Below are positions 611 through 724 of a DNA stretch of 64,000 bases, piece by piece. The notes under the pieces are model-generated. The model ran no database searches and had not been told where the DNA came from. It was given only the letters and a program-made list of their open reading frames with translations. The stretch's first letter is position 1. The number at the start of each line of letters is the position of its first letter. The stretch comes from Adineta vaga (lineage: Eukaryota; Animalia; Rotifera): contig CP075493.1 in assembly GCA_021613535.1 (NCBI GenBank), positions 5,394,001 through 5,458,000 on the forward strand. Direction: 5' to 3'. The position numbers and the translations under genes are program-made.

Positions 611-724
611 GGAGTCAGCAAGAGCATTGCTGCGTTTCTTGATATATATGAATGAAGCAAACTCGTAGTACACGATTCCGATATAACATTTTTTGTACCG
701 ATTCGGCCAGCACAAGAATAGTCT
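611..724 (+). promoter_or_regulatory. Inverted copy of the putative rDNA Pol I initiation region and 5'ETS start inside the LINE 3'UTR (copy 1)
   Basis: 652-724 matches the reverse complement of 15525-15597 at 65/73 nt without gaps; weaker similarity continues upstream over the TATATATGAA motif. Function is inferred. Confidence 0.8.

What the first reader, a model, noticed from the sequence alone, without database searches (positions are those of the whole stretch)
611..724. rDNA-spacer LINE carries an inverted copy of the host's putative Pol I start site and 5'ETS leader in its 3'UTR
Seen: just past the ORF2 stop, + strand 652-724 (ATGAAGCAAACTCGTAGTACACGATTCCGATATAAC...CACAAGAATAGTCT) matches the reverse complement of 15525-15597 at 65/73 nt with no gaps. 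Weaker similarity runs about 40 nt further upstream through TATATATGAA (GAGTCAGCAAGAGCATTG versus GAATAAGCAGATGGATTG). Copy 2 has it too (26940-27012). The mismatches to host rDNA, against near-identity between rDNA units, show an old integral part of the element rather than a junction artefact. Inference, model A: a captured Pol I promoter fires antisense into ORF2, back-to-back with the real promoter, giving self-regulation by antisense/dsRNA/piRNA or competing for Pol I factors. Model B: the element RNA is complementary to the first ~70 nt of nascent pre-rRNA and tethers the RNP to active rDNA promoters, explaining insertion 0.5-0.75 kb upstream of the start. I know of no described LINE with this arrangement, but I could not search.
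Basis: partly seen in the sequence, partly recalled or inferred. Interest (0 to 1): 0.92.

Follow-up and report, generated by a model that had tools for sequence, protein, structure and literature searches.

The report
Rotifer LINEs carry inverted rDNA promoter
A whole group of jumping genes (Hebe-type LINEs) in bdelloid rotifers carries, just after its last gene and pointing backwards, an old copy of the host's ribosomal-RNA promoter region, apparently not described before; what it does is untested.

Summary
Window 652-724 (+) matches the reverse complement of 15525-15597 at 65/73 (E 1e-19). It matches all five rDNA units equally, and the weaker upstream similarity is real.

The genome is Adineta vaga, inferred from protein names and a published primer. 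The element is a relative of the published jockey-clade LINE Hebe, with about 77% ORF2 identity.

The same inverted module sits about 45 nt past the ORF2 stop in every Hebe-group lineage examined:
- dispersed Hebe itself, whose published 72-bp 3'UTR repeats turn out to be rDNA promoter-like units;
- elements of Rotaria and A. ricciae;
- elements on metagenome contigs.

Five more distant lineages lack the module and have only a roughly 200-nt 3' domain. The module is therefore one old insertion into the 3'UTR.

About 30 environmental bdelloid rDNA units carry the homologous block 540-600 nt upstream of 18S. It is the best conserved part of their spacer, which fits a promoter plus leader. No RNA evidence could be obtained.

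Best reading, by inference: an rDNA-derived antisense Pol I-type promoter or factor-binding array. The RNA-tether model stays open. Three of seven loci of the window-type subgroup lie inside rDNA promoter motifs.

Other first readers of this scan noted the same block in neighbouring windows.

The parts
216..227 (.). Left copy of the 12-bp target-site duplication (GTCAATTCATTT). It lies in the conserved 'box' of the most upstream promoter-like spacer repeat.
   Evidence: the empty site is at 41849-41861, and the same 12 nt recur at 5151-5162.
228..246 (-). Poly(A) tail of the LINE, seen as a T run on the + strand.
247..470 (-). Ancestral 3' terminal domain of the LINE. AATAAA is at 258-263, 11 nt before the tail. 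A conserved hairpin lies at about 345-370.
   Evidence: The domain is shared with lineages that lack the module (L071, L079, L080). The 11-nt spacing is as published for Hebe.
580..607 (+). Degenerate distal promoter-like unit (a box-like piece followed by ATATAATATAAAGG).
   Evidence: Read by eye. It is below the profile threshold, so it is tentative.
608..652 (+). Proximal rDNA-promoter-like unit: a box at about 612-630 and an initiator-like TATATATG at 643-650.
   Evidence: the gene-promoter profile from 22 other bdelloid rDNAs hits at E 7e-7, on the + strand only.
652..736 (+). Copy of the first ~85 nt of the presumed 5'ETS leader, inverted relative to the LINE ORFs.
   Evidence: 65/73 over 652-724. 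Alignments extend the similarity to the ...TCGATG block at about 736.
770..3468 (-). ORF2 (AP endonuclease and reverse transcriptase), with a stop at 770-772. There is one frameshift near 1846-1882 in this copy.
   Evidence: ORF2 is about 77% identical to Hebe ORF2 (P0007).
3437..4942 (-). ORF1, gag-like, 501 aa, with at least one CCHC knuckle.
4943..5150 (-). 5'UTR. In sense, the element starts with CATT.
   Evidence: The same start is published for Hebe.
5151..5162 (.). Right copy of the target-site duplication.
26940..27012 (+). The same leader-like segment in LINE copy 2.
15525..15597 (-). The rDNA partner: the start of the presumed 5'ETS in unit 1. Equivalents are 25929-26001, 41027-41099, 51426-51498 and 61832-61904.
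   Evidence: It lies 590 nt upstream of the 18S 5' end at 15007.
41093..41140 (-). Presumed rDNA gene promoter (-45..+6) in an uninterrupted unit.
   Evidence: E 2.7e-12. It is conserved across bdelloid rDNAs.
41141..41861 (-). Array of about 9 diverged promoter-like spacer repeats of 75-100 bp. Profile hits are at 41174-41205, 41242-41279, 41422-41456 and 41601-41623.
   Evidence: TRF does not detect them.

Best explanation
What it is (shown): an old, family-wide module of the Hebe group of jockey-clade LINEs of bdelloid rotifers. It is homologous to the host rDNA region that runs from promoter-like spacer repeats, through the presumed gene promoter, to about +85/+100 of the 5'ETS. It lies inverted between the ORF2 stop and the ancestral 3' terminal domain.

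Origin (inferred): a piece of rDNA entered the short 3'UTR of the group's ancestor once, before Adineta and Rotaria split. It has since been kept by selection, perhaps with occasional exchange with rDNA.

How it most likely works (inferred, about 40%): at the DNA level it mimics the host promoter array. Its box-plus-initiator units bind the factors that bind the rDNA spacer and gene promoter. Transcription fires from the 3'UTR back through ORF2 and ORF1, giving Pol I-type antisense RNA that carries the rRNA leader. This would be the Pol I counterpart of the antisense UTR promoters of the related Drosophila telomeric LINEs.
For: - Same position and orientation in all related lineages of this genome. 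Also in Rotaria sp., R. magnacalcarata, A. ricciae and metagenome elements.
- Absent from five more distant lineages (65-54% ORF2 identity), whose 3'UTR is only the ~200-nt terminal domain.
- The ORF2 tree is compatible with a single module-bearing clade (AU p 0.45). That clade interleaves Adineta and Rotaria elements.
- Between the window LINE and Hebe, only the module and the terminal domain of the 3'UTR still align.
- The non-transcribed promoter part is retained and tandemly amplified inside the LINEs. Hebe has 72-bp units x3.7, published as 1-4 copies. A Rotaria element has about six ~95-bp units.
- All profile hits are co-oriented with the leader-like part, with no hits in the controls.
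- The rDNA partner is conserved in about 30 bdelloid rDNAs at a fixed distance from 18S. The shared block is the best conserved part of the spacer, 0.83-0.98 identity against 0.58-0.67 upstream.
- The relatives HeT-A, TART and TAHRE bear antisense promoters in their UTRs (PMC5537684).
- A conserved leader stem keeps G-U pairs that work only on the leader-sense strand in 9 of 17 LINE modules (weak).
Against: - There is no RNA evidence at all: neither the rRNA start nor any antisense LINE transcript was seen.
- No factor-binding data exist.
- In Hebe the last unit's initiator is degenerate, and about 25 extra nt separate it from the leader-like part.
- An antisense transcript across the ORFs has no obvious benefit for the element.
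- The best conserved part is the transcribed leader, which the RNA-pairing rival also explains.
- The direction of transfer is inferred from LINE outgroups only; no outgroup rDNA was available.
Confidence: 0.45

Rival explanations
1. RNA-level tether. The sense LINE RNA carries about 85 nt complementary to the 5' leader of nascent pre-rRNA, and to spacer transcripts. It pairs with them and holds the LINE particle at active rDNA promoters, which biases integration there.
For: - Three of seven loci of the window-type subgroup lie within 850 bp upstream of, or exactly at, the presumed start. All three are inside conserved promoter motifs, and both orientations occur.
- This subgroup has the most rDNA-like leader copy (72/89, with runs of up to 20 nt). 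Hebe's copy is more diverged (about 60/102), and Hebe has no rDNA loci among more than 20.
- The leader part is the best conserved part of the module.
Against: - It does not explain why non-transcribed promoter units are kept and amplified. Those units are only 60-70% like the host repeats, too little for pairing.
- Most module-bearing elements (Hebe) do not sit in rDNA.
- Cause and effect may be reversed, because elements living in rDNA can be converted by it.
- The mismatch pattern shows no clear G-U-tolerant bias (8 differences, read).
- Only three loci support it.
Confidence: 0.2
2. A passenger without function. A piece of rDNA was picked up once and persists through hitch-hiking, or through repeated gene conversion from the high-copy rDNA.
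For: - TEs often acquire host fragments. The review cited judges most rDNA pieces in TEs to be of no benefit.
- The module tree scatters some LINE modules among rDNAs: Rmag_L073 groups with L043/L057/L069 (80/90) and ENA_L033c with L037/L070.
- The lnL drop for LINE monophyly is 33.
Against: - The module is kept in every lineage of a group that predates the Adineta/Rotaria split, while the surrounding UTR has diverged beyond alignment.
- Conservation is at motif level with preserved spacing, and the units were amplified independently.
- Conversion is not established (AU p 0.07; the site test is weak).
- Dispersed Hebe copies are far from rDNA.
Confidence: 0.13
3. Reverse direction. The bdelloid rDNA promoter, leader and spacer repeats descend from the 3'UTR of a Hebe-like LINE that inserted inverted upstream of 18S in an early bdelloid.
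For: - Spacers are often built from transposon remnants (bioRxiv 10.1101/2023.02.20.529178, listed, abstract only).
- Inverted insertion of such a LINE at the promoter does occur.
- The rDNA sequence looks like the common ancestor of all LINE modules, which fits either direction.
Against: - In LINEs the module is a derived insertion, since the outgroup lineages lack it.
- No trace of the LINE 3' terminal domain is found in any of 21 spacers.
- rDNA conservation runs on seamlessly past +100, where the LINE similarity stops.
Confidence: 0.07
4. A shared protein-binding platform used for targeting rather than for transcription. The box and initiator motifs bind a host factor that the LINE machinery recognises, as Pol III factors guide Ty3 or TRE5-A. 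That factor marks both the rDNA spacer motifs as targets and the element's own DNA.
For: All three rDNA loci of the subgroup are inside the box or the initiator itself, not merely near them.
Against: - Only three loci support it.
- Hebe proper has the motifs but no rDNA insertions.
- No protein evidence exists.
- The reason for carrying the motif inside the element is unclear.
Confidence: 0.1

Closest known systems
Hebe, a jockey-clade non-LTR retrotransposon of Adineta vaga (Gladyshev & Arkhipova 2010, PMC2861651)
   Same: - Two ORFs (gag-like, then APE plus RT), a start with CATT, and AATAAA 11 nt before the poly(A) tail.
- A long 3'UTR with tandem repeats.
- ORF2 about 77% identical.
- The dispersed family in this genome is Hebe itself: 98-99% to D1D8L9, and the paper's primer seq1 matches exactly.
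   Different: - The window element is a separate subfamily with a shorter 3'UTR (~520 nt), one to two promoter-like units and no 72-bp array.
- Three of its subgroup's seven loci are in rDNA spacers, whereas Hebe was described as subtelomeric.
- The paper does not mention any similarity of the 3'UTR or its 72-bp repeats to rDNA.
Pokey (piggyBac DNA transposon of Daphnia) with IGS-derived A repeats (Elliott et al. 2013, PMC3849761)
   Same: - A transposon that lives in and out of rDNA carries 2-5 tandem copies of a spacer-derived sequence in a non-coding region.
- Both of its divergent lineages have them.
- A transcription role was proposed.
   Different: - Pokey is a DNA transposon.
- Its repeats sit upstream of the transposase and come from a non-repetitive spacer part whose relation to the promoter is unknown.
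- They evolve in clear concert with rDNA (5% divergence against 40% for the transposase).
- Here the host is a LINE, and the piece includes the presumed core promoter and leader.
- The piece is antisense, it is much older, and concerted evolution is not shown.
Antisense promoters in the UTRs of the Drosophila telomeric LINEs TART, HeT-A and TAHRE (review PMC5537684). From my own knowledge, also the C-module of Dictyostelium TRE5-A.
   Same: - Related jockey-clade elements with long, repeat-prone 3'UTRs.
- Their promoters fire against the ORFs, and this feature is conserved across orthologues.
   Different: - Those are Pol II promoters with no reported similarity to rDNA.
- Here antisense transcription is only inferred, and the sequence is a copy of the presumed Pol I promoter region.
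TEs that borrowed an rRNA-gene promoter: 5S-derived SINEs and Cassandra/Ajax TRIMs (review PMC10946416)
   Same: An rDNA-derived promoter is kept inside a retroelement. Cassandra tracks host promoter changes.
   Different: - Those use the internal Pol III promoter of 5S, in sense, in non-autonomous elements.
- Table 2 of that review lists no LINE and no 45S promoter case.
rDNA-specific LINEs (R1, R2, R4, R9 and others)
   Same: A LINE living in rDNA units and spread by unit duplication.
   Different: - R elements hit one exact site in the 28S or 18S genes.
- This subgroup hits several spacer sites and also non-rDNA sites.

Membership tests
Hebe group, jockey-clade LINE | ORF2 with an AP endonuclease and a reverse transcriptase, close to Hebe ORF2 | tested here: met
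   Pfam gives Exo_endo_phos and RVT_1. ORF2 is 75-78% identical to P0007 (D1D8L9_ADIVA). It falls inside a 98/98 clade with Hebe.
Hebe group, jockey-clade LINE | Gag-like ORF1 with CCHC knuckles | tested here: inconclusive
   The 501-aa ORF1 has one strict CX2CX4HX4C at aa 244 and a sub-threshold PRE_C2HC hit. Hebe has three knuckles. Variant spacings were not examined.
Hebe group, jockey-clade LINE | Starts with CATT; AATAAA 11 nt before the poly(A) tail; target duplication | tested here: met
   compared.
Functional RNA polymerase I promoter | Sequence and architecture of the host gene promoter (box, spacing, initiator) in one orientation | tested here: met
   The profile from 22 rDNAs hits window 608-652 at E 7e-7. 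The box-to-initiator spacing is within 1-2 nt of the rDNA spacing, read.
Functional RNA polymerase I promoter | Transcripts that start there, are made by Pol I, and depend on Pol I factors | not testable with these tools
All listed runs are contigs only.
Site-specific rDNA LINE (R-element-like) | Independent insertions at one exact rDNA site; few or no copies elsewhere | tested here: not met
   The three window-type rDNA copies share one target duplication, so they are one event. Other loci are at different spacer positions and at non-rDNA sites on C5, C4, C1 and C3.
TE module evolving in concert with rDNA (Pokey-like) | Module copies cluster with the host's rDNA rather than by TE lineage | tested here: inconclusive
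   The module tree mostly follows LINE lineages, with two exceptions. The AU test of LINE monophyly gives p 0.07. The A. vaga / A. ricciae site test is weak.
LINE with an antisense UTR promoter (TART/HeT-A type) | Antisense transcripts initiating in the UTR | not testable with these tools
   No reads could be laid.
3' transduction product | Sequence distal to the captured piece derives from the same host flank | tested here: not met
   The 3' terminal domain is shared with module-less lineages. It has no similarity to 21 bdelloid spacers.

The most novel reading that the evidence does not exclude
A LINE lineage has kept a working mimic of its host's Pol I promoter array (repeats, core promoter and rRNA leader) for tens of millions of years. 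It uses the mimic either to make Pol I-driven antisense RNA as self-restraint in an asexual host, or to home to active rDNA promoters by pairing with the nascent leader. In both cases the module and the host promoter would be functionally coupled.
Probability: 0.35. Interest if true: 0.85.

Novelty: new variant of a known kind. Interest (0 to 1): 0.7.

Why it matters
Pol I promoters are thought to serve rRNA genes only. Known borrowings of rDNA promoters by mobile elements involve the Pol III 5S promoter or, in Pokey, spacer repeats of unknown role.

An autonomous LINE group that carries the presumed 45S promoter, its spacer repeats and the rRNA leader, conserved across bdelloid genera, would be a new kind of host mimicry. 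It also gives three practical returns:
- It offers a reading of the 72-bp 3'UTR repeats that the Hebe paper described as peculiar.
- It supplies a candidate Pol I promoter and a highly conserved leader for bdelloid rDNA, together with about 30 environmental sequences.
- It provides a natural test bed for self-regulation of transposons in ancient asexuals, with dispersed promoter copies and three insertions inside promoter motifs.

Tried and rejected
- **RNA evidence.** The look-up of sequencing runs listed only contig-level runs. All later queries start at 263 or avoid the stretch.
- **3' transduction origin.** Rejected. The terminal domain is ancestral and unrelated to spacers.
- **Host tracking.** Four tests gave hints only: nearest-rDNA ranks, the module tree, the AU test (p 0.07) and the A. 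vaga / A. ricciae site test.
- **The apparent A. ricciae 'module' in L031.** It proved to be genuine rDNA joined to a LINE fragment across an N gap, so it was re-used as the named A. ricciae promoter.
- **Structured-RNA reading.** Rfam found nothing in 263-800 at E<=1 beyond chance-level hits. Folding z-scores are -1.8 and -1.9 on the two strands. The alifold stem of the leader is weak at -2.3 kcal/mol.
- **Tandem Repeats Finder on the spacer repeats.** They are too diverged to be detected.
- **'rDNA-specific family'.** Rejected as strict specificity (see the membership test).

Full report
**Setting**

Rfam places five rDNA units on the minus strand of the window. Their 18S 5' ends are at 15007, 25411, 40510, 50908 and 61314. 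The basic unit is about 10.4 kb.

Two units carry a 4.9-kb insertion. Comparison with empty units gives the element as 228-5150 on the minus strand, the same orientation as the rDNA. It has a poly(A) tail, seen as a T run at 228-246. It has a 12-bp target duplication at 216-227 and 5151-5162. The empty site is at 41849-41861, about 750 bp upstream of the presumed start.

The element encodes a 501-aa ORF1 and an ORF2 with AP endonuclease and reverse transcriptase domains. Each of the two copies has one frameshift in ORF2, at different places.

**The observation**

It holds exactly. Window 652-724 (+) equals the reverse complement of 15525-15597 at 65/73 without gaps (E 1.35e-19), and it matches the same block of all five units. 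Copy 2 has the segment at 26940-27012.

The weaker upstream similarity is also real. A profile built only from the gene promoters (-50..+6) of 22 other bdelloid rDNAs hits window 608-652 at E 7e-7. It finds nothing in 4.4 kb of LINE ORFs or in 6.3 kb of rRNA genes.

**Which organism and which element**

- The genome has 100.8 Mb in 6 contigs.
- ORF2 finds named relatives only in bdelloid rotifers. One is UniRef D1D8L9 of Adineta vaga at 75% identity. That is ORF2 of Hebe, a basal jockey-clade LINE (PMC2861651).
- A dispersed family in this genome is 98-99% identical to that protein.
- That family contains the paper's primer seq1 exactly and has the published 72-bp 3'UTR repeat.

So the genome is A. 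vaga, by inference. The dispersed family is Hebe, and the window element is a related subfamily at about 77% ORF2 identity. It shares Hebe's CATT start and the AATAAA 11 nt before the tail.

**The module is not special to the spacer element**

The rDNA block matches every related LINE lineage in the genome, at the same place (about 45 nt past the ORF2 stop) and in the same inverted orientation. The core occurs in the genome only in rDNA units and in about 30 such LINEs. The rDNA units lie on C1 at 5.39-5.59 Mb and on C4 at 2.63-2.72 and 3.07-3.12 Mb.

Hebe's 72-bp repeats, read on the antisense strand, are box-plus-initiator units like the promoter-like repeats of the rDNA spacer.

The module is also present in other species:
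- Hebe-group elements of Rotaria sp. Silwood2, one of which has about six ~95-bp promoter-like units followed by the leader-like part;
- R. magnacalcarata;
- A. ricciae;
- ENA and JGI metagenome contigs.

Five more distant lineages (65, 58, 56, 54 and 54% ORF2 identity) lack it. Their 3'UTR is only the ~200-nt terminal domain with the conserved hairpin.

On the ORF2 tree the module-bearing rows are compatible with one clade (AU p 0.45) inside a 99/99 group. Adineta and Rotaria elements interleave within it. The module is therefore a single old insertion between the stop codon and the ancestral 3' domain, and it predates the split of these genera.

**The rDNA partner**

One scan of metagenome contigs with a degenerate 25-nt pattern from the block gave 37 loci. 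About 30 are bdelloid rDNA units whose 18S is 96.5-99.9% identical to the window's. In these the block lies 540-600 nt upstream of 18S. Two of the other loci are LINEs.

Mean pairwise identity across 23 distinct units:

| Region relative to the presumed start | Identity |
|---|---|
| -290..-76 | 0.58-0.67 |
| -75..-1 | 0.73-0.79 |
| +1..+100 | 0.83-0.98 |
| beyond +200 | lower again (0.71-0.78) |

Part of +25..+49 is biased upward, because the search pattern was required there. The +75..+99 window, at 0.98, is not biased.

The upstream spacer holds co-oriented promoter-like units: 5 profile hits in A. vaga and 7 in A. ricciae. These units diverge from the gene promoter right after the initiator. 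All of this is what a Pol I promoter, spacer promoters and a constrained leader look like. But no RNA 5' end was seen, so the start at 41099 (15597) remains presumed.

**Direction and mode of origin**

- LINE outgroups lack the module, so within LINEs it is a gain.
- The LINE terminal domain has no similarity to 21 spacers. This speaks against both a 3' transduction origin and an rDNA origin from a whole LINE 3' end.
- rDNA conservation runs on past +100, where the LINE similarity stops.

I therefore favour transfer from rDNA to the LINE. I keep the reverse direction at about 7%, because no outgroup rDNA was available.

**Is the module coupled to the host promoter?**

- Each LINE lineage is closer to rDNA than to other lineages. 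The window LINE matches rDNA at 72/89 but Hebe at only 60/102. This fits divergence from an rDNA-like ancestor while the rDNA changed slowly.
- The module tree mostly follows LINE lineages. The R. magnacalcarata module, however, groups with three rDNA types (80/90), and one ENA module groups with others.
- Holding all LINE modules together costs 33 lnL units, but the AU p is 0.07.
- At the 15 sites where A. vaga and A. ricciae rDNA differ, A. vaga LINEs side with A. vaga 57:34. The two A. ricciae LINEs score 3:7 and 7:5.

These are hints of exchange or tracking, not a demonstration.

**Where the subgroup inserts**

- The three rDNA copies of the window element share one site and one duplication, so they are one event. 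A 99% copy lies in unrelated DNA on C5.
- An 87.6% relative is inserted, inverted, exactly at the initiator of another C1 unit, with the duplication ATGAA at the equivalent of 41099-41095.
- A third element is chimeric and internally deleted. It sits at the edge of the C4 array, with its 5' junction inside the box of the next spacer repeat.

Thus 3 of 7 loci of this subgroup lie inside promoter motifs that make up roughly 0.03% of the assembly. That fraction is my own arithmetic from about 32 assembled units. None of more than 20 Hebe loci lies in rDNA. This is a preference, not site specificity, and it is the main support for an RNA-tether or factor-guided model.

**Mechanism**

Shown: the structure, its age, its conservation, and its likeness to the presumed promoter array.

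Inferred: what it does. I put about 40% on a DNA-level promoter mimic that fires antisense. Three reasons:
- Non-transcribed units are kept with the right spacing and orientation.
- They were amplified independently inside elements.
- Related telomeric LINEs are known to bear antisense UTR promoters (PMC5537684).

The RNA tether gets about 20%. The two readings are not exclusive.

Rfam and folding give no sign of a known or unusually stable RNA.

**Comparison with the literature**

- The Hebe paper calls the 72-bp repeat 'peculiar' and does not link it to rDNA.
- A 2024 review of rDNA pieces in transposons lists 5S-promoter SINEs and TRIMs, SINE28, and Pokey's spacer-derived repeats. It lists no LINE and no 45S promoter (PMC10946416).
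- Pokey is the nearest analogue (PMC3849761).

I rate the finding as a new variant of a known kind.

**Limits**

- The organism name, the Pol I start and every functional statement are inferences.
I worked beside them, and nothing from them was sent to search tools afterwards.

Noticed in passing
window 7949-12525 (28S of unit 1), insertion near 9090-9895: This 28S matches the Rfam model over 4577 nt, against 3786 in the other units, so it carries an insertion of about 790 bp.
   Followed up: no
G000:C1:5560161-5565066 (L077, L005): A full-length relative of the window LINE (87.6% nt) is inserted inverted exactly at the presumed rRNA initiator, with the duplication ATGAA. It cuts that unit's ETS and 18S off from its promoter. 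Its own module then points the same way as the rDNA.
   Followed up: yes
G000:C4:2616786-2620478 (L078:5787-9478, L007): A chimeric LINE sits at the edge of the C4 rDNA array. Its 5' part is 96% identical to the window element and its 3'UTR only 77-79%. It has two internal deletions of the kind described for Hebe. One side is spacer and the other is unrelated DNA.
   Followed up: partly
L031:5769-11003 (A. ricciae, GCA_905250025.1, 801-kb scaffold): A 3'-truncated LINE (87% nt to the window element) is joined across a 7-N gap to an inverted rDNA piece (about 300 nt of ETS, the promoter and about 7 spacer repeats) inside a gene-bearing scaffold. The annotated 1068-aa protein P0070 is a chimeric model over it.
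   Followed up: partly
L033 (ENA contig ctg237281, 17 kb): A head-to-tail chain of three Hebe-group LINEs. The middle one ends right after its leader-like segment, where the next element's RT ORF begins.
   Followed up: no
L079:4700-5500 (JGI contig): A module-less relative (65% ORF2 identity) is inserted in a long array of a ~66-bp tandem repeat that holds an internal palindrome.
   Followed up: no
rDNA loci L034-L070, +75..+99 of the presumed ETS: A 25-nt block of the leader (TCTAGTTTCTCGAGGATGATGTTGT) is 98% conserved across 23 distinct bdelloid rDNAs. That is more than the promoter itself, and its function is unknown.
   Followed up: partly
window 770-3468 and 27058-29756: The two spacer copies of the LINE are 99.2% identical, but each has a single ORF2 frameshift at a different place (near 1846-1882 and near 29343-29361). 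ORF1 is open in both.
   Followed up: partly
G000:C4:2650919-2670176 and C4:3074206-3120207; C1:5467036-5486670: Several rDNA units are 2.6-9 kb longer than the 10.4-kb standard, and no Hebe-group module accounts for the extra length. They must hold other insertions.
   Followed up: no
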